This document shows, piece after piece, positions 36,583 through 49,643 of a DNA stretch of 64,000 nucleotides. The position numbers and the translations under genes were made by a program. The notes below the pieces were generated by a model that made no database searches, was not told where the DNA came from, and saw only the letters and a program-made list of their open reading frames with translations. The DNA is from Adineta vaga (lineage: Eukaryota > Animalia > Rotifera). Positions within the stretch are counted from its first letter, which is position 1. Every line of letters starts with the position of its first letter. The stretch covers positions 11,594,001-11,658,000 of the forward strand of contig CP075494.1 in NCBI GenBank assembly GCA_021613535.1, read 5' to 3'.

Positions 36583-39394
36583 TTACAATGGCACAACCAT
36601 GCCAACACTAACTGTATGATCTGGTGATAAATGGAGATTTTTTTGACCAAATGGAAATATATTTTTCAAGAATGCATAGATCAATAGAATTGATTTACAT
36701 GGTAGAGCACGCCATCCTTTACGTACAACTCGAACAGTAATAGCTGGAATAAAAAATGTAACATTTCGACTTTCTGGTACGGGAACACTGTGTTCTTTTG
36801 CAGCTAATTCCAAGCTAGATTAGTAAGAAAAAATGAACAATGAAATCATTTCAGGAATAAGCTCTCAATTAACTTACATATCCAGGAGATGAATTTTATG
36901 TTCGGAATAGCCATAACGTGCCGTAATATGATAGAAATGCCGTTCATCTGATCCATATTTTTGAACTTTTAATCGTTGACTAATATCGACAATTGGAATA
37001 CGTGCATATTCGAGTTTTAAAAAGATTGGTACTTGTGGAAGCTATAATAAAATGAAAACTTTTAAGCATAGAAAATTCTACTCATGTCTACATACTGCAT
37101 GAATACGTGCTAGAACACGTTCAAATACATGTGGTGTATGTCTTGATGAAGTCGTTAAAAAAACACCAAGACCAGGAGTAATTGTGAAGACAACATGACC
37201 AGTTAAACTTGTACGAAAGACACTATCTTCACCATGACCATTCACTGATGAATTGTGACTTTCATCCTTTTCATCGCTTAATAAAGATGCCGATGGTGGA
37301 AGTATATTGATAAGTGGTATTGTTCGACGTGCATCTTCTTCATCACTATTCGTCATTTGACGTTCCAATGCTAAACTTTTCGATCGTTGCAATTCTTCAT
37401 TTTTTGTTTCTGTAATAATTGTATTTGTTCCATTTAAGAAACCTAAACGTGCAGGTAATTGAAAAAGAGCAGTTGTTTGCGCATAACAATGAAGGTGCTG
37501 ACGAAGTAATGTCTGACCATGATACCATGAAAAACCAAGAATAAAAAAAAATATTGCGATCAATAAAGCAACCCAACCACCTTCGAAAAATTTCACAGCA
37601 TTTGCGGCAAGAAAATAAACATCAATAAAAAGAAATAAACCAAAAAGGATTACACGTATCCAATGATGTTTCCATACATAACGCATAACACACATGTAGA
37701 GTATTGTTGTAATTAACATATCGGAACAAACAGTAACACCATCTAAAAGAAACAATGTTCAGTTCATATCCAATATCATCGATTTCTTTACTTACAAGCA
37801 TGTGCTAAATGACTACTACTACGAAAATATAAAGTAATAGATATTGTAATTAACATAACGATCCAATTGATAGCCTTGAAGAAAAAGAACAAGGTATCTG
37901 CTCTTTTTTTCAATCTGTTACTAGAAAAAAATCTCTTACCGGAACATAAATTTGCCCAATAACTTTTTTACTAGTATGGATGACTCGTAATGGTGGAGAA
38001 AAGCCAAGAGAAGCTGCTTGACTCAATAACGAAAAAACACCGGTGATAATTGCCTGCGAAGCAATAACTAAAAAGATTGAATGAATATGAATACGAAAGC
38101 TATAATGATATCTATTTACTAGTTGCTATTGTAGCAAGAATAATCAATGGCCAACGAGCCCAATCTGGAGCAGCATTATAGAATGGATTAGAAATTGCTT
38201 CAGGATGTCGCATGATGAATGCTCCTTGACCAAGATAATTAGACATAACAGATGGTAATACAATACATAACCAACTAGTTCGTATCGGCCATCGACCAAA
38301 GTGTCCTAAGAAAAATTCAATATTATTTTAATTGAAAGTTCTGTAAGTTACCCAAGTCTGCATACAATGCTTCGAGACCAGTAACGGATAGAAAGACACC
38401 TCCTAAATAAGAAAATAAAAATAAGTATTACGATCTCTGAATATTATTTGTATTACCAATTTGAAGAAATCCTTTTCGTTTTTCTCGAATTAAATAGCTG
38501 ATTGCTTCCCATGGATTAAATGCTCGAAGAATCGCTGGTTCAAAAGTAATACGCCAAATACCAATGGAAAATAAAACACCAAACCAAACAATCATTATTG
38601 GTGCAAATGTTAACCCTAATTGTTATGAAATAAAGAGAAGAATTATGTTGTACAAAAACTAAATTTTATTTACCAATCTTTCCTGATCCAAACATTTGTA
38701 CAACGAATAAACCAATAATAATTAAAATTGTGATTGGTAAAACCCATTTTTGTAATTTTACCGATGTTGTCGCTAGACCTTCCACTGCCGATAGAACACT
38801 AATCGCTGGAGTTAGTGCTCCATCACCTAGAATCAAAATAGCGAAAAACGTTGCAAATTATTACAAATCATTAATTACCGATTAGTAATGAAGCAGCAAA
38901 AATTGAGACAATGCTAATAATTTGTTTAGCACGAGCACGTAATCGACTATTTTCTCCAGTTAAAAGACCGCAAAGTGCAAATGTTCCACCTTCACCACGA
39001 TTATCTGCCATTAAAATAAAAACAGAATATTTTATTGACACAACAATAATTAAATTCCATAAAATTAATGATATAGCGCCAATACATTGTTCTTGTGTTG
39101 GACTAGGATTTCCAGCAAAAATTGTATGAATAACATACAGTGGACTTGTACCGATATCACCAAAGATAACGCCAAGTGAACTAATTGTTAATGATAAATA
39201 TAAACGAAAATTATTACGTGGTGAAACTTTCGTGGTGTGTTCTTGAGCTTCTGATATTGATAGAGACGGTTTAATTTTATCATGTATAACGTTTCCATTC
39301 GCTAAACTATCGCTTCTAATTCCAATACTTGTAGAACCTTAAGAGAAATCTTATTAAACAAGAAAAAATGAATGTTTATCTTACTTTGAACCAT
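36583..39394 (-). CDS. kup: KUP/HAK/KT potassium transporter with multiple introns (non-metazoan family)
   Basis: [110 protein letters not shown]. About 10 GT-AG introns. Confidence 0.95.
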
Positions 39395-41443: not shown

Positions 41444-44400
41444 CTATGCATTGATCGTAATGGAAGGATATATAATAAGACCTGAGGATGAACCTGAAAA
41501 AATACGAGTTTGTCGTTTAGTCATATTTTCGTATTGTCTAACAACATTATGTACAGCTTCAAGTGCATCCGACGATTTCCGAGCGAGTATGGCAACAGTT
41601 CCTCCACCACCACCACCTGTAATTTTAGCGCCGAGTAATACTTTTGGTGATGCTGATGATGACGATAGTGATTGTTGTCGTATTAAATTTACGAGTAAAT
41701 TTATTTCATCACTAGCTAGATCACATGCTCGATAACTAGCATCTGCTTGAAACATTAATTCACCAAGATTAGACAGGTAATCAGTACAAAGATAATGATC
41801 ATTCTTTAATAATTGTTCAAAAAGTTGGACTCGAAAATTTTCTTCAATTGGATGAGCAGTCGCTGCACGTAATGGATAGATTTCATTCGAATCGATTTTA
41901 CTCAATGGATCAAGATGCAATGATGATTGAAATTCTTTACCAACTAGTTTTTCCGGTAATAACATTCGATATTGATTATTAAATTTTGAAAGTGTTATTT
42001 GACATAGATGATGAATATTATCTGGTAGATTGAGTAGTTGTTTGCCCATAAAAGTAGCGGTCCGTACTCGTCGATATGTTGAACCAGCTGTCGACCGTTT
42101 AACACCTGAATCAATCCCGAATAATTGAATATTTGATGGTATCGTAACATTATGAAACGATGGATTAGGTACATGTTGACAAAGGAGAGAAAATAAATGA
42201 TCAGTACAAGCATGAACACATGTCATTTGATCCATAAATCCGCATGAACTACCAACAACATAATTTTCAACAAATTGACAAAGCAATGCTAATTCAGTTT
42301 TCGATATAAGATTATCTAGATTGAGGCATGAACATGCTAAAATATTCACAAGCTATGACAAAGTTAATCACTAATCTGTCTTTACCTGCACGAGCAACAG
42401 CAACTTCAAGAGCAGCAGATGAAGCTACACCCTTGTTACAGGGTACATCAGAAATAACAACTATATTGAAACCAACTGGAAGGATACTGCTCTCTGTTTT
42501 TTTTATCAATTCAGCTAAAATACCTACTATATAACTAGGCCAATTGACTGGCTCTTCGTGTGGAATTGTAGTTCTTTGTTCTTGAGTATACCATGTTTCT
42601 AATCGTTTTCTTAATGTTTCATTTTGATTATCAAAAAGTATACTCATAGGAATCTCACGATCCCATATAGTTAAGTTATGTTGATTGATAGATTTGATTT
42701 CCACATTATCTGTTTGGATACTAATAAGGCGAATTGTACTTGTGTTGGCAGGTTGAATAAAAGCATAAGTACGCTGTGCAATTGGATATTGAAGAACATG
42801 CGAACCAGAATAATCAGCAAAACCTAAAACGAATTATAAAGATCATCGTACGTTAAGTTATTCTTTTAAACATGCCTCCCATAAGGTCTAAACGACCCGG
42901 AGCACTAGCACTGTGTATTGGTGCATTAGAAATCGAGAATAAAGTTTGCACTTTATCGATTTGTTTTAATAACGACCATACATTCGAAATCGAAGAGTTG
43001 TTATGTGATTTTTCTCTTTTGTCAACAGTAAATGCTCGAAATGTTCGATAATATTCTTTTGGATCACCAATATCATATCGTTCACCATCTAATAAACAGC
43101 CAAATAATTGTCCATTCTGTCGAAGACCATTCATTGCTTCGCGTAGACCAAGTTCTACTGGAATTGTTTCTTGTTCTAGTTTTTGCTCGTGCAACCGAAG
43201 ATAGTGGAAAATTGTCGGTGGTAGAATATCCATTCCAGCTTGACAAAGAAATGAATTTTGAGATAATTTAAATTGAAAACGATTCATGGCTATATTAATA
43301 GAAGGTTTTTCGATCATATCGGTAATTTGGAAAAATTGTCTATTTTCCAGATCGATATCTGATTGTAATAGGCCAGTGCTTGAAAATTCTTCAGCAGTAC
43401 ATGTCATAACACCTGTAAGACCTTGCCGAGACGGCTCAGAGACATGTTGGCGATATGCAGTAAGTAATTGCTGTAAACATGATTGGTGAGTGTTGTTGGG
43501 TTGATAAAGATGATCACTTAACATCACAACAAATGGTTCATTACTAATATATTGTTCTGTTTGAAGAACCGCATGACCAAATCCTTTTGGTGATGTTTGT
43601 AAAATATAATCAATTTTATTATGTGGATGTGAGGAAAAATACGATTGGAATAAATGTAGTTGTTCAGGAGCAATTACAAGCAAGACTTCTTCAATACCAG
43701 TTCCTTCGGCGAAGATTTCTTCTAGAAGAAGATCAAGTACTGGACGACATGTCCATTGAGTCGAACTGGATTGAGCAATCGGTAAAAGAATCTTAGGTAT
43801 AATTGTACTTTGTGGACGCATTCGTGTACCAAGTCCAGCAGTCGGTACAACAACTTTTCGGACGACTGTTTTAGAAGATTTAAATGAAGATTTCAGGACA
43901 TTCGTATCGATGATATCTTTTTTTAACATAGTTACTACATGGTCAGAGAATGGCGTACGTGATTGAACAGACCAGCCTGTCGATGAAAATAGATTATCCC
44001 ATTCTTGTCGAGTTCGTTCCTTAGCTTTGTGTAGGAAAAACATGTGTAATGATAGAAGAGCATGGTGATTACCATTTAAATCAACTTCACGTTCGATGAC
44101 GCAGAGATGTTTAGATGGAATATGATTTAAAATAAGTTTCGCTTTTTCATCTGGCCAATCATGAAGAACACGTGATAGTAGATAGAAATCAGCTGTAGGT
44201 AATGAACCAGAAAATAGATCTCCACTTTGAAACTCAATCTTTGGATGAGATTTTGCTAAATTGATAACTTCAGGGCGATCGATACAGATTAAATGTTGAT
44301 TGGAACAGTGATTTGATAATTCACATAAAAGAGCACCCATTCCACCACCAAGATCAACAATAGTCGATGATTGAAATAGTTCATCAGGAAGTACAGATGC

Positions 44401-45784
44401 AATTCCGTGCCAATCTTGATTCGCATATGAATTCAGTACTCTTTGTGTTAAACGCATAAGTTCAGGATTTTTTGCAATTTTAGAAAATAAATCTTTGTTT
44501 GCATGCAGTTGGTGGTTACGATACTTCAAACTCGGTAACCATCCTGAAATGTATTCATCTTGTAACCAATAGAGAGCTCGATCACGAATGATACTATCTG
44601 AATCAAACAGAAGACGACCTCGTTGTGTAATGGTATATTCGCCATCGACGGATGATGGTTTAATAAAACCGAATTGATTCCATACTCGTTGAATTTGTTC
44701 CTTCAATTGTTGATCATCTTTATCAGATTTGTTTCCATTATCGAGTAAACTTGTCTTCTGTTCTAAGCCTATTTTAAGTGCAAATGCTGGCCAATAGTTC
44801 TTCGACATCTAAAAGAAAATAGATATCAAGAAAACGTTATCGATCGAAATCAATTGACCTGTTCAATATCAGCACAATTTTCATTATTACAATCGTTTAA
44901 TCGAGCTAAGATATTATGTTGCTCATCAATAATACATCTTGATCCATCATGTAACATTTGTACAAGTGCTTGACCGTTGTAAAAATTTTCAATTTGTCGA
45001 TATCGACGACCTTGTCCAGCATCCATACCATGACGATCAATAAAGAACCAACCATTTTCATCTCGTGCTCGTGCTAAACCTTTATGATAAACGTCCAGAT
45101 CAAGAAAACTTATTTTGTAAGATGATGACGATGAGTGAAGAGCATCACCATTTTCATCGATAGCATGAAAGAGACCATCGATAGAACTACGAACCACAGC
45201 ACTTCCCTAGAGTTTCATAATCCAATTGAACGTAAACTAACGAAGAAAAAGAACTTACTTCTCGAAAATCCCCTGCATACGAATGTGGACCTGAGATCAT
45301 TTTTCCTTTAGGATCAATATGATAGTATTGAAGATTAAAATCTCGCACAGGACATCGATATGATTGAAAATTACCACACCATTGCCATATGAAACTATAC
45401 GCAGAAGTTCCTGTCGTTTTAATATGATACCAATAATCAATATTCTAAAAGTATTCACATTACATTATCATTTGATTTCAACATATGACAAACCTGTACA
45501 GCAGCAAGATTTTCATAGAAACCAAATGTACGAGAAAAACGTTGAGGATAGGCATCTTCTCCTCGGTCGTTAATATGAAATGCTGCTCCCGTTCGATCAA
45601 TAACTGGAGCTAAACCGGGTGAATGAAACGGTAAAACAATTTTGAATCGATTTTCATACAATGGTTGTTGACTAGACAAACAAATGTGATATGTACCACA
45701 TGATGAAACTTTCGAATAAGTCCATTTCTGACGACGAATGATATTTTTCGATAGAATTAATTGTGAAAATCGATTCATTAACAT
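41444..45784 (-). CDS. Gene B: WG-repeat + SAM-dependent O-methyltransferase + GalU-type NTP-sugar pyrophosphorylase + L-arabinokinase-like GHMP kinase fusion, about 5 introns
   Basis: WG-type repeats (FHSPGLAPV, RTFGFYENLAAV, WCGNFQ, YAGDFRE, YHKGLARARDENGWFFIDRHG). Methyltransferase motifs VDLGGGMG, GDLF, LSRVLHDWPDE. Nucleotidyltransferase motifs VPTAGLGTRMRP...PK, QTSPKGFGHAVL, IEKP, YDIGD. Kinase motifs APGRLDLMGG|FADYSGSHVLQ, VPCNKGVASSAA, GAKITGGGGGGTV. The methyltransferase, nucleotidyltransferase and start of the kinase lie in one 651-aa ORF (42853-44808). Confidence 0.88.
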
Positions 45785-45841
45785 CTAAAATGAATTCGAA
45801 TACTATGAAAACGAACAAAATAGGAAAGAAAATGATTTTAT

Positions 45842-48800
45842 TTATATTTCAGCAGGTGGTTTTCTCATATTACAATTTTGACAAAGAGGATAGTCTGTGT
45901 AATTATTGATTAATTCTTTATATCTGTCACCAGTCCAGATTTTCAATATATTTTGATCGGTATGTTGAACATTACCAAATGAACCTAATGATAATCGTTC
46001 TTGATCGGGAGCGCAGCAAGGATCATATCGACCACTATGATTAATCCATGCTTCTTTACCTAAAAATGGACAAACACTTTCAGGATGAATTGTTGATGAA
46101 CCACTATTTTCATCCAATTCAAAGAAATTTTCAAGTTTAATCTAGAAGAGAAAAGGCAAAATGAGAAAGAATTCTCTTGATTTTTCAGGCATAAAATTTT
46201 TTACTTGTTTTCCTATAGGTAATAATTGTTGTTGAGCGATGTTTTGACATTGAATAACACATTGATTCCATCGACGAATGGCGTCAGTTGATCGACGTAG
46301 ATTTTGATCTTTGATTTGTTTAAAATGAGCCCATAAATGATGACCTTTGATACGATCGATACCCAATGAAATGCCCAATTTGACAATCTATTAGAATTAC
46401 TTTTATTTTTAATATCAAGTTAACTCGAAAGAAATGAAAATATTGAAAGAAATTTAAATGAACTTAAGAAGATATTTTTATGCAATAGGAAATGTTATGG
46501 GAAAGTTCTATGCTTGTCGGAAGGTATGTACATGACTACAAACCATTCCAAAGATTTTCTATGACTATAAGATGAGTCAAACTTTATTACCTCGGGAATT
46601 TCTGGTAAATTGATTTCCATGAAAGTCAATTGCAATGTTACTGTTGCTCGATTACCACCTTGTTCTGCCATCTGATCACGAATATGAATGAATTTTTTAA
46701 TATTATCCAGCTAGATGAAGATATAGAAAAGCGAGATACTTAAAAGAAAGAAACAATAATCAAATACTTGTCTATCAAGTTTAGAATGTTTCATCACTAT
46801 TTCTTGAGTTTTTTTTGTAATTCCATTCCAAGAAAATTTCACATCACTCAAAACTGGCATGAGTAAATGAGCCCATTCCGCAACTGAATTTTAAAATGAA
46901 TTCTTTCGATTAAAGATTCACAAAGTATCTATACATACCAGAATGACCTTGTGGAGAATGAAATGATCCATTCGTGGTAAGATTCAATTTAATATTATAA
47001 TCTCCACATAGTTTAATGATATCTTCGAATGTACGACCTTTGGCATCACGATACATAAGTGGTTCACCCATTGTTGATGGAATCTAGATATACAAAAGTA
47101 AAATTTGTTATGTGCGCGAATAGAAAGAATAAAGATAGGCGTTTTGTTCTTACAATTTCTTGTAAACCATGTGGTGCTGTTTCAGTAACAACTTGTTTAA
47201 TGATATCAAAATCCATTCTACGACGACGAATTTTTGCTTCTTTGCGCGCTTTTTGATGTGGTGAATATTCCGAATGCTGTTCACACATGATACAACTAAA
47301 ATTACAATCATCAGGATTCGTATCAAATGTTATTCGACGTGGAGCGGCTAGTTGCTCAATAGGTTTTGGTTGAAGACTGATTGATTGTTTTAGTTTTATT
47401 TGATTATTTGTCAATGTTGAATATATATTAATTAGTTCATCAACATGTGTTTCAATTGATGGTACTTGTCCATCTCTAGAATGAAGATAACCATGTTGAC
47501 CTAATTTGTCAAGTATATCTGGTTGTTGAATAACTCGAAGAATAGTATCCGCAAGTGATGAAGTATCACGATGCACAAAGGTCAATCCGTTCACTCCATC
47601 TTTGACTAATTCACTCTAAAAATAACGAAAAAATTTTTACGATAAATAAATTCAAACGATTCTCACCATTCCACCTTGGTTAGCTGTAATCACAGGTACA
47701 TGACATTGCTGTGCTTCATGAATAACTAATGGAGAGTTTTCATCCCAAATTGATGGAACAACGATACAATCAACATGATTAAAAACGCAATCTACAATTT
47801 CAGAATTCTTATATTCAGGACGCCATTCAACAGAAATTCCTGCTGCTTTAGTCATTGCTTGAAGATTACTAGTAGTAGCAGGATCTGGTCGACCATAAAT
47901 GGCCAGAGAAAATCGATCAGCAAGTTTTGGTTGAGATCGAACGATATGTTGTGCAGCTTCTACGAATTGATTGATACCTTTTGATGCAGAATGTCGTCCA
48001 ATATATCCGAAAACAATGGGTTTGTTTGATTGACGAACACGATGACGATGAGCTAAGATTGAACGATCAAATCCATATGGTAAAAATTTGACTTTTTCAG
48101 TTGCTAATCCAAATTCATTAACAAATCGTTTCTGTAAATGATGTGAAGGTGCAATAAACATATCGATGGCATCACAAGTCTCTCGTACTGTACGCATTCG
48201 TTCATTAATCCACCATGTCCAATATTCTGTTTCACGATCTTTATTTGCTGTAGTACCTATAGTAGAAATACAAAATACTTTTATATGATTTTAAAATGAT
48301 ATACCTGTTGCAAAACGCGACGTGAAACATTTCGTGGCACATTTTTCATCCTTTTGTTCTGTACATAATTCGTAAGGTATCTGGCCATTATATGTTGAAG
48401 CTACACCATTAACTAGAAATTGCCCACGTGGACACATAAGCCAATAATCATGTAACGTGTAGAGAATCTTTGCTCCTAGGAGATCTCGTGCACGTTGTGG
48501 TAATGTTAATGATAAATGATTTAAATGACCAAAATGAACAATATTTGGCTTCGGATTAAGTTTTTGACAGATATCTTCGAAACAACGATCAATATCTGTA
48601 TTTACAAATCTTTGATAGGGTGCTTCTCGTGCATGATTAATCAAATAGATTGGTATAGTTGGATCGTGTTCATCTTGAGTTTGTCGAACAAGAAAATCTG
48701 CACGAAATGGATCTTGTTCACGTGAAATAACCGATACGCTAGATGTTTTTCCCGAAAGACTCAATCGAACTGCTAATGTTTGTGTATAAACCTATACATA

Positions 48801-48969
48801 ACCATTTTCTTTAATTCTTAGAATGAGAAAAATTTATACATGCCTCTGAACCTGCATTAAATAACGGTGGATACCCATGATTAACTAATAAAACTGATGG
48901 TTTTTTAATAGTTGAAGTAGAAAAAAACGCACGTTTTACTTCTCTACATTTACCCAAAAAACGAGTCAT
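45842..48969 (-). CDS. Gene A: GT4 (GT-B) glycosyltransferase + radical SAM/SPASM-twitch fusion, about 8 introns
   Basis: NHGYPPLFNAGSEVY, HFGHLNHLS, TLHDYWLMCPRGQF, FGYIGR, VPSIWDENSPLVIHEA (EX7E). ORF 47064-47594 runs directly from the GT C-terminus into RITFDTNPDDCNFSCIMC (CxxxCxxC). Then STMGEPLMY, LTTNGSF and auxiliary Cys motifs CPFL...DPCC...CQNC. Confidence 0.9.
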
Positions 48970-49643
48970 AGAATCAAAGAATAGGATGTACGTTGTCTAG
49001 GTGTTTATTATCTACAATGAAATTGTGTGTCGTTTCTTTTCTACTACATGCTATTTATGTATCCGAGAAAAAAAAAGAACGGCGGAGATAGATTCGCTTA
49101 AATATACGTTATATTCTTCTGTCAACCTTGATTAAAGCTAAAAAAAGAAAAAAAAAATTTTTTTGTTCTGCGGTTTACCACACTGAGAAAAAATCTATCG
49201 TATTGTTTTTCTATTCGTCATCAAACAAACACGAGATAAACACACAAAAAAAATCTATCAAACAATAATGTTTTTAATGTATGTTTTAATACAATTTTAA
49301 CGATGGGTGAGGGTGTAGATATAATCAGTGTGAAAGATAAAAGAACACTAACCCTCTGTAAATATCAAATCAAGTATTTTGAAAAATAGTTCTTAGAAAA
49401 TACACATCCTTTTTGTTTAATTCAATACCTATAATGGAGAGCTATTGTTCAAACAGTCGCTGATGATGACGATGAAAAGGTATGAGAATTAGTGCACGGT
49501 ATATAATGCTTTTATTTAATAATTCAATCGATGACTGTTACATATCATAGAAATAAAAAAGCAAAGCATTATTTACAAAACGAAAAAGAGAAAGAGAGAA
49601 AAGTAGACGAATTTTATCTGACTAAGAAGTTTCGAATATACGA

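What the first reader, a model, noticed from the sequence alone, without database searches (positions are those of the whole stretch)
45710..48969. Both foreign-type fusion enzymes have N-termini resembling mitochondrial presequences
Gene A begins MTRFLGKCREVKRAFFSTSTIKKP before the GT4 first strand (SVLLVNHGYPP). It is Arg/Lys/Ser/Thr-rich with a single acidic residue, and R-A-F-F-S-T fits the R-x|F-x-x-S/T MPP/MIP cleavage pattern. Gene B begins MLMNRFSQLILSKNIIRRQKWTYSK, basic with no acidic residues, before the WG repeats. Both resemble the genuine presequence of ALDH4A1 in this window (MYRSCFRRYAST). Inference: the pathway was retargeted to mitochondria, where Fe-S clusters are made, and its substrate could be mitochondrial (lipid, nucleic acid or metabolite).
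Basis: partly seen in the sequence, partly recalled or inferred. Interest (0 to 1): 0.82.

Follow-up and report, generated by a model that had tools for sequence, protein, structure and literature searches.

The report
Mitochondrial-type leaders on two rotifer enzymes
Two neighbouring non-animal-type enzyme genes in the rotifer Adineta vaga begin with short, basic, acid-poor N-terminal tails that bacterial relatives lack and other eukaryotic relatives have, so an uncharacterised sugar-modifying pathway probably works inside mitochondria, though import is untested.

Summary
Both N-termini are at the stated coordinates (ATG 48969 and ATG 45784, minus strand), and transcript contigs support both start codons. 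Gene A has a ~40-nt 5' UTR with an in-frame stop and no upstream ATG. Gene B carries the bdelloid spliced leader directly before its ATG.

Both tails are additions: 90 of 95 bacterial GT4-radical SAM-SPASM relatives start with Met plus the first strand, and prokaryotic WG-methyltransferases start about where bdelloid residue 20 aligns. Eleven of the 12 full-length bdelloid and protist N-termini compared, plus the other complete eukaryote-type starts tabulated, carry a 13-56-residue tail with net charge +4 to +6 and 0-2 acidic residues. These include Physarum, Pseudopedinella and the diatom Amphora. The tails match this genome's own likely presequences, lack a signal-peptide core and lie outside the AlphaFold folds.

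One correction: in both gene trees the bdelloid genes fall inside a eukaryote-type clade, so targeting may predate their arrival in rotifers. No trained predictor was available and nothing shows import. The Fe-S rationale and the substrate remain speculation.

The scan holds 23 "presequence" notes on this genome, several on other foreign-type genes (for example s1-505273). None shows import, and I checked none of them.

The parts
48898..48969 (-). Gene A codons 1-24, the N-terminal tail that ends just before the first GT4 strand (SVLLV)
   Evidence: ORF and sequence. Absent from 90 of 95 bacterial homologues. In the A. steineri orthologue P0081, residues 1-23 are coil, residues 1-17 have pLDDT under 50, and the first strand is 24-28.
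48970..49013 (-). Gene A 5' UTR as far as transcript contigs reach (their ends lie at 49007-49013)
   Evidence: Contig sides of 165-171 nt beyond the first joint. In-frame TAG and no upstream ATG.
48792..48843 (-). Gene A intron 1, GC-AG type (boundary ambiguous by 1-3 nt), which joins ...NAGSE to VYTQTLA
   Evidence: Joint 48790 to 48843 seen in X1, X3 and X13 with 3 shared letters. The joined reading matches orthologues P0075 and P0081.
45842..48969 (-). Gene A coding span (GT4 + radical SAM + SPASM), nine exons
   Evidence: Pfam hits on exons and eight joints in transcript contigs. Orthologues are 840-845 aa with the same domains.
45785..45841 (-). 57-bp spacer between the gene A stop and the gene B ATG. 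It ends in the trans-splice acceptor AG (45786-45785), which is part of a TAG directly before the ATG.
   Evidence: Gene B contigs end at 45786 with spliced-leader letters. Gene A contigs end at 45821-45850. The stop directly before the ATG is conserved in 4 bdelloid loci.
45728..45784 (-). Gene B codons 1-19, the N-terminal tail beyond the point where prokaryotic WG-methyltransferases begin
   Evidence: Length fixed at 19 residues in 9 bdelloid sequences, with M1, R5 and R18 invariant. AlphaFold gives a lone helix 2-16 with pLDDT under 50 for residues 1-17.
41444..45784 (-). Gene B coding span (WG repeats + O-methyltransferase + NTP-transferase + GHMP kinase), equal to NCBI I4U23_025670, 1362 aa
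33366..33422 (+). Internal control: the 19 residues of ALDH4A1 (P5C dehydrogenase) that precede the start of the family profile
   Evidence: TIGR01236 position 1 aligns with residue 20. This start codon was not checked against transcripts.

Best explanation
Both tails are most likely cleavable mitochondrial matrix-targeting presequences. If so, the two Adineta vaga proteins are imported into mitochondria. Gene A is GT4-radical SAM-SPASM. Gene B is WG-methyltransferase-NTP-transferase-sugar kinase.

Shown: the tails are translated from the first AUG of each mRNA. They are eukaryote-specific additions placed exactly in front of the point where prokaryotic homologues begin. They are basic, acid-poor and Ser/Thr-rich, with no hydrophobic core. 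They evolve faster than the enzyme body while keeping their length and charges. They sit outside the predicted folds.

Inferred: recognition by the TOM/TIM23 import machinery, cleavage near the end of the tail, and action of the pathway in the matrix. For A the cleavage would lie after R13-A14 or after K22, giving a mature end at or near the bacterial start.

The targeting probably did not arise in the rotifer for gene B. The bdelloid genes belong to a eukaryote-type clade whose other members have analogous tails. These members include a diatom, a dictyochophyte, Physarum and intron-bearing metagenomic contigs.
For: - **Start codons:** confirmed.
- **Addition for gene A:** 90 of 95 bacterial-type GT4-rSAM proteins have only Met before the first strand. 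Three of the four with clearly longer called N-termini (21, 24 and 5 residues) have a Met at the canonical start. In Rhodoferax the gene's start overlaps the upstream gene's stop.
- **Addition for gene B:** 52 of 73 anchored prokaryotic WG-methyltransferases start within -2 to +4 residues of the point aligning with bdelloid K20. Nine others start 22-28 residues later, and 12 have longer starts that are not basic.
- **Recurrence in eukaryote-type homologues:** for A, 8 bdelloid tails of 13-28 aa, Physarum 48 aa, P0074 33 aa and Pseudopedinella 34 aa. For B, 9 bdelloid tails of 19 aa plus protist sequences of 17-56 aa. All tabulated tails have net charge +4 to +6 and 0-2 acidic residues.
- **Constraint:** gene B tails are 51% identical on average against 79% for the next 41 residues, with fixed length and R5 and R18 invariant. 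In gene A, all eight charged positions are kept between A. vaga and A. ricciae.
- **Own-genome controls:** two MDH2 copies (28 and 32 aa before KVAVLGA, ending ...RYAST and ...RYASS), ALDH4A1 (19 aa...RRYAST) and probably SOD2 look the same. Two secreted-type SODs have hydrophobic leaders, with a Kyte-Doolittle 8-residue maximum of 3.4-3.5 against 1.1-1.6 here.
- **Structure:** the tails lie outside confident folds (pTM 0.87 and 0.71). B's tail is predicted as a lone helix.
- **Isoforms:** there is no internal Met in gene A's first exon and none after Met3 in gene B's first 60 residues, so no leaderless form from a nearby second start.
Against: - No trained predictor and no localisation data were available.
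- My feature counts are crude, and basic acid-poor N-termini arise in 1.4-3.8% of random ORFs of this AT-rich genome.
- Gene B's tail is short (19 aa) and has no clear R-2/R-3/R-10 cleavage motif. Gene A's motif is only partly conserved, and A's tail is predicted as coil rather than helix.
- The hydrophobic moments (0.55-0.61) are only moderately above the null means (0.42-0.46).
- By general knowledge, a kinase plus pyrophosphorylase making a nucleotide sugar inside animal mitochondria has no precedent.
- Most "eukaryote" labels on metagenomic homologues are my inference from introns, architecture and three named species.
- One called eukaryotic N-terminus is not tail-like. P0085 (A. ricciae, 796 aa) opens with 9 residues joined directly to the post-intron sequence, which I read as a gene-model start error, because locus L003 encodes the normal tail.
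Confidence: 0.7

Rival explanations
1. The tails are translated but are not import signals. They could be neutral 5' extensions of the reading frame fixed when the genes were domesticated. They could also be short basic or amphipathic peptides with another role, such as membrane association, regulation or interaction. In either case the enzymes would be cytosolic.
For: No predictor or experiment supports import. Random ORFs of this genome give similar charge patterns at 1.4-3.8%. The B tail is short and lacks a cleavage motif. The scan's first readers flagged "presequence" 23 times in this genome, which suggests a high base rate of such calls.
Against: A neutral extension should drift in length and charge. 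Instead the B tail is exactly 19 residues in nine bdelloid sequences from two genera (Adineta, Rotaria) and two unassigned metagenomic contigs, with invariant arginines. The same kind of tail recurs, without sequence similarity, in every other eukaryote-type lineage and in none of the typical prokaryotic ones.
Confidence: 0.2
2. The tails target another compartment, such as ER or secretory pathway, peroxisome via PTS2, or plastid in the algal homologues.
For: Several homologues come from plastid-bearing stramenopiles (Amphora, Pseudopedinella).
Against: There is no hydrophobic core: the Kyte-Doolittle 8-residue maximum is 1.1-1.8 in all tails against 3.4-3.5 for signal peptides of this genome. 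Ochrophyte plastid import needs a signal peptide first (general knowledge). By eye I saw no PTS2-like nonapeptide. By general knowledge, an animal has no compartment other than mitochondria that uses basic, acid-poor cleavable N-terminal leaders.
Confidence: 0.06
3. The start codons are mis-called, and the real proteins begin further upstream or downstream, so the "tails" are artefacts of ORF reading.
For: Gene B has a second Met at residue 3.
Against: Transcript contigs from three studies define both 5' ends. For A this is the first AUG after an in-frame stop. For B the spliced leader is joined directly before the AUG. The same starts appear in NCBI models of A. vaga, A. steineri and Rotaria. 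There is no other Met before the folded domain apart from Met3 of B.
Confidence: 0.02

Closest known systems
Classical MPP-cleaved mitochondrial presequences, for example those I infer for this genome's own MDH2, ALDH4A1 and SOD2
   Same: They are N-terminal and 19-32 residues long. They carry net charge +3 to +6 with no or one acidic residue and are Ser/Thr-rich. An Arg lies 2-3 residues before an aromatic/Ala-Ser-Thr stretch (RYAST in the controls, RAFFSTS in gene A). They end where the conserved enzyme begins.
   Different: Import and cleavage are not shown for the two enzymes, nor directly for the controls. Gene B has no recognisable cleavage motif.
Laterally acquired RquA of freshwater sponges (bioRxiv 10.64898/2026.04.08.717022)
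   Same: Both are animal genes whose nearest relatives are in protists, with an N-terminal mitochondrial targeting sequence.
   Different: For RquA the targeting sequence was predicted with proper tools and shown to drive GFP into yeast mitochondria, and the product (rhodoquinone) is known. Here neither localisation nor product is known, and two multi-domain proteins are involved.
Bacterial GT4-radical SAM-SPASM fusion proteins (781-785 aa; for example Rhodoferax fermentans P0093, Halomonas P0144)
   Same: Same three-domain architecture, about 45-50% identical over the GT4 half. Gene A is a member of this family.
   Different: The bacterial proteins have no N-terminal tail. They sit in a four-gene operon (epimerase, this protein, methyltransferase, histidine phosphatase) beside defence and mobile genes. 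They form a clade separate from the eukaryote-type sequences.
Known mitochondrial radical SAM enzymes such as lipoyl synthase, MOCS1A and CDK5RAP1 (from general knowledge, not tested here)
   Same: They are Fe-S radical SAM enzymes imported through N-terminal presequences.
   Different: None is fused to a glycosyltransferase or linked to nucleotide-sugar synthesis. No sequence relation beyond the radical SAM core was seen. NCBIfam hits were all far below their cut-offs.

Membership tests
Mitochondrial matrix-targeting presequence | Lies at the true N-terminus of the translated protein | tested here: met
   Transcript 5' ends, the spliced-leader junction, an in-frame upstream stop and matching NCBI models.
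Mitochondrial matrix-targeting presequence | Net positive charge, acidic residues rare, hydroxylated residues common, no long hydrophobic core | tested here: met
   A: +6, 1 Glu, 5 Ser/Thr, Kyte-Doolittle 8-residue maximum 1.1. B: +4, 0 acidic, maximum 1.6. Only 1.4% and 3.8% of null ORFs are as extreme.
Mitochondrial matrix-targeting presequence | Able to form an amphipathic helix | tested here: inconclusive
   B: AlphaFold gives a lone helix at residues 2-16, and the hydrophobic moment is 0.55 against a null mean of 0.42. A: predicted coil at low confidence, with moment 0.61 against 0.46.
Mitochondrial matrix-targeting presequence | MPP-type cleavage motif (Arg at -2, -3 or -10) | tested here: inconclusive
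   Read by eye, with no matrix scoring. A: R13-A-F-F-S-T-S-T-I-K fits the R-2 and R-10 patterns, but the motif is only partly conserved among bdelloids. B: no clear motif.
Mitochondrial matrix-targeting presequence | Is an addition to the catalytic fold, absent from prokaryotic homologues | tested here: met
Mitochondrial matrix-targeting presequence | Scored as mitochondrial by trained predictors (TargetP, MitoFates, DeepLoc) | not testable with these tools
   No such predictor is among the tools or in the closed Python machine.
Mitochondrial matrix-targeting presequence | Directs import and is cleaved in vivo or in vitro | not testable with these tools
   Needs experiments. No proteomic or localisation paper was found.
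ER signal peptide | Hydrophobic h-region of about 7-15 residues after a short basic n-region | tested here: not met
   The Kyte-Doolittle 8-residue maximum is 1.1-1.6, against 3.4-3.5 in two secreted-type SOD leaders of the same genome.
GT4-radical SAM-SPASM fusion family (gene A) | GT4 C-terminal domain, a CxxxCxxC radical SAM motif and a SPASM domain in one chain, with full-length homology to the bacterial family | tested here: met
   Pfam hits on exons. The CxxxCxxC motif is in ORF 47064-47594. Orthologues P0075 and P0081 have all three domains. The joined A. vaga protein itself was not searched.
Spliced-leader trans-spliced mRNA (gene B) | The 3' end of the bdelloid 23-nt leader is joined to an AG acceptor at the mRNA 5' end | tested here: met
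   Nine loose letters plus the shared AG at 45786 in an X13 contig. A 23-nt leader on more than half of bdelloid transcripts is reported in PMC1925144.

The most novel reading that the evidence does not exclude
The six-domain cassette could be a conserved, uncharacterised mitochondrial pathway. Its domains are a sugar kinase, an NDP-sugar pyrophosphorylase, a GT4 transferase, a radical SAM/SPASM enzyme, an O-methyltransferase and a WG-repeat module. It is shared by diatoms, dictyochophytes, amoebozoans and bdelloid rotifers, and it would make a methylated, radical-modified glycoconjugate inside the organelle. To my knowledge, that would be the first complete nucleotide-sugar activation and transfer route in a mitochondrial matrix. 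In bdelloids it would have arrived by eukaryote-to-animal transfer with its targeting already in place for one gene.
Probability: 0.4. Interest if true: 0.8.

Novelty: new member of a known kind. Interest (0 to 1): 0.6.

Why it matters
If the leaders work as they appear to, an animal runs a whole non-animal sugar-activating and radical SAM pathway inside its mitochondria. The same pathway would be mitochondrial in several unrelated protist groups. That would point to an unknown mitochondrial metabolite or modification and narrow the search for the substrate. It would also add a multi-enzyme example of a laterally acquired pathway integrated into an animal organelle.

The work also gives a useful caution for this genome. 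Basic N-termini are fairly common by chance here, so such calls need the comparison with homologues that was made in this report.

Tried and rejected
- **Paralogues.** I searched the genome for a second copy of either gene to compare N-termini. Each is single copy.
- **Literature.** Searches for the fusion, for bdelloid radical SAM/glycosyltransferase genes and for a mitochondrial link found nothing specific. Only the RquA analogue turned up.
- **Function.** NCBIfam, PADLOC and PDB sequence searches gave only generic GT4 hits (MshA- and BshA-like) and generic radical SAM hits, all far below cut-offs. They did not name a product.
- I repeated the analysis by cutting all sequences from stored files.
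- **Controls.** A first automatic pick of first exons for the MDH2 and SOD2 controls was wrong. I then read them from the upstream DNA. The SOD2 first exon rests on my own splice reading and is the weakest control.
- **Joined model left out.** Exons were searched by reference. The NCBI orthologue P0081 stood in for gene A in the fold, and the NCBI A. vaga protein P0194 was used for gene B.
- **Big search not used.** The representative-protein search was not run, because the word search already gave 95 bacterial N-termini.
Full report
**Setting**

The window is chromosome 5 (11,594,001-11,658,000) of a 100.8-Mb, six-contig, roughly 30% G+C genome. NCBI's protein I4U23_025670 of Adineta vaga (P0194, 1362 aa) starts with exactly the exon-1 peptide encoded at 45784-45494, so the organism is the bdelloid rotifer A. 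vaga.

Two minus-strand genes lie head to tail.
- Gene A runs from ATG 48969 to the stop at 45842 and carries GT4, radical SAM and SPASM domains.
- Gene B runs from ATG 45784 to the stop at 41444. It carries WG repeats, a Methyltransf_2 O-methyltransferase, an NTP-transferase and a GHMP/galactokinase-like kinase.

Each gene is single copy in this assembly.

**Are the N-termini real?**

Four public runs from three studies turned out to be spliced transcript assemblies. They define eight introns in gene A and three in the 5' part of gene B.

Gene A contigs end at 49007-49013. The 38-44-nt leader has an in-frame TAG ten codons upstream of ATG 48969 and no ATG in any frame. The first intron is GC-AG and joins ...NAGSE to VYTQTLA, as in annotated orthologues.

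Gene B contigs end at 45786. One contig carries nine further letters whose reverse complement, together with the shared AG, is the 3' end of the bdelloid spliced leader. A 23-nt leader on more than half of bdelloid mRNAs is reported in PMC1925144.

So the gene B mRNA begins with the leader, and the ATG follows at once. A stop codon directly in front of that ATG is conserved in four bdelloid loci.

**Are the tails additions?**

For gene A the answer is clear. Among 95 bacterial-type GT4-radical SAM-SPASM proteins, 90 have only Met before the first strand (M-K-I-L-K-V-I-H-G-Y-P). Three of the four with clearly longer called N-termini have a Met at that canonical place. In Rhodoferax the start overlaps the stop of the upstream gene.

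Bdelloid proteins have 13-28 extra residues in front of the same strand. Physarum polycephalum has 48, Pseudopedinella elastica has 34, and the metagenomic sequence P0074 has 33.

Of 73 anchored prokaryotic sequences, 52 start within -2 to +4 residues of that point, and nine start 22-28 residues later. The other 12 have longer starts that are not basic.

The other eukaryote-type homologues have 17-56 extra residues. One is named: the diatom Amphora coffeiformis.

**What are the tails like?**

All tabulated eukaryotic tails have net charge +4 to +6, 0-2 acidic residues and many Ser/Thr. Their maximum 8-residue Kyte-Doolittle hydropathy is 0.6-1.8 (-0.2 in the 13-residue L010 tail).

In six-frame ATG-ORFs of this AT-rich genome, 4 of 288 are as basic and acid-poor as A, and 11 of 288 as B. 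Chance alone is therefore unlikely but not negligible. The recurrence across lineages is the stronger argument.

Within bdelloids the gene B tail is always 19 residues. M1, R5 and R18 are invariant, and residue 6 is always aromatic. Mean pairwise identity is 51%, against 79% for the next 41 residues. Between A. vaga and A. ricciae, every charged position of the gene A tail is kept. Fast sequence change with conserved length and charge is what targeting peptides show.

**Own-genome controls**

- The two mitochondrial-type malate dehydrogenase copies have separate first exons of 28 and 32 residues. These end ...F-I-R-Y-A-S-T-A-S... and ...T-R-Y-A-S-S-S..., before K-V-A-V-L-G-A.
- ALDH4A1 in the window has 19 residues (...F-R-R-Y-A-S-T...) before position 1 of the P5C-dehydrogenase profile.
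- SOD2 probably has 20 residues, but that rests on my own splice reading.
- All of these have net charge +3 to +4 and no acidic residue in the leader.
- Two secreted-type SOD genes of the same genome have hydrophobic leaders with hydropathy 3.4-3.5.

Genes A and B fall with the first group. Gene A's K-R-A-F-F-S-T-S resembles the R-Y-A-S-T theme. However, the Arg and Phe positions vary among bdelloids, so I rate the cleavage motif as suggestive only.

**Structure**

AlphaFold models built on alignments are confident for both domains (pLDDT 87, pTM 0.87 for A; pLDDT 87.5, pTM 0.71 for B).
- In the A. steineri orthologue of gene A, residues 1-23 are coil, residues 1-17 have pLDDT under 50, and the first strand is 24-28.
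- In A. vaga gene B, residues 1-17 have pLDDT under 50 and form a lone helix at 2-16 before the beta-rich WG domain.

Neither tail is part of the fold.

**Origin**

In a tree of 44 GT4-rSAM sequences, the six bdelloid sequences (support 100) are sister to eight protist-type sequences that include Pseudopedinella (support 99). Physarum, P0074 and two tail-less sequences join this group in the next clade out (support 99). The other 26 bacterial sequences form the opposite side of that split.

In a tree of the WG-methyltransferase part, bdelloids (100) are sister to 13 protist-type sequences including the diatom group (95). All 20 eukaryote-type rows stand apart from prokaryotes (87).

One protist-like contig (L006) has introns and encodes all six domains in one gene, in the order WG-OMT-NTP-GHMP-GT4-rSAM-SPASM, with a single basic N-terminal tail.

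The NTP-transferase/kinase fusion to the WG-methyltransferase is found only in the eukaryote-type group. The simplest reading is one eukaryote-type lineage of the cassette in which the leading protein already had a basic tail. Bdelloids then either received it from a protist or retained it. Gene A's tail must have arisen when, or wherever, the GT4 protein became separate. The trees are unrooted and the labels of metagenomic rows are inferred, so the direction of transfer is not shown.

**Verdict**

It remains an inference, because no trained predictor and no localisation data were available. The retargeting story needs the amendment above. The Fe-S rationale and the substrate remain speculative.

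**What the pathway makes is unknown**

The GT4 part is nearest to MshA/BshA-type enzymes, but only at generic level. In bacteria the family sits in an operon of epimerase, GT4-rSAM-SPASM, methyltransferase and histidine phosphatase, beside defence and mobile genes. PADLOC gives no assignment.

The joined spliced model of gene A was not sent to any search or fold tool. Exons were searched by reference, and annotated orthologues were used instead.

Noticed in passing
window 45785-45841: Genes A and B are only 57 bp apart. Gene A transcript contigs end 0-21 nt past its stop codon, and gene B mRNA is spliced-leader trans-spliced at a TAG|ATG junction that is conserved in four bdelloid loci. This looks like an operon-like pair resolved by trans-splicing. 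A polycistronic precursor was not shown.
   Followed up: partly
window 48792-48843: The first intron of gene A uses a GC donor (GC-AG), while the other ten joints seen are GT-AG.
   Followed up: partly
L006:5306-14537: A protist-like metagenomic contig encodes the whole six-domain cassette as one intron-bearing gene, in the order WG-OMT-NTP-GHMP-GT4-rSAM-SPASM. This is a different fusion order from the bdelloid pair.
   Followed up: partly
L013:7069-13317 and L014:7033-13325: Bacterial relatives (Rhodoferax, Halomonas) sit in a four-gene operon of NAD-epimerase, GT4-rSAM-SPASM, a methyltransferase of about 555 aa and a histidine phosphatase. The operon lies beside AbiJ, HipA, WYL, UvrD-helicase and PLD genes, which looks like a defence or mobile island.
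   Followed up: no
window 37078-37755; L003:14409-17221: A KUP/HAK-type potassium transporter gene (Pfam K_trans) lies downstream of gene B in A. ricciae, L005 and L011. A window ORF looks like part of it. To my knowledge this family is not typical of animals.
   Followed up: no
window 44476 and 48813: Single transcript contigs in X1 and X3 break off at these places and continue with 178-255 letters that do not match the stretch. These may be chimeric assemblies, alternative splicing or an allelic difference.
   Followed up: no
L022 and L023 (chromosomes 1 and 4): Two Fe/Mn-superoxide-dismutase-like genes have hydrophobic signal-peptide-type N-termini rather than mitochondrial leaders.
   Followed up: no
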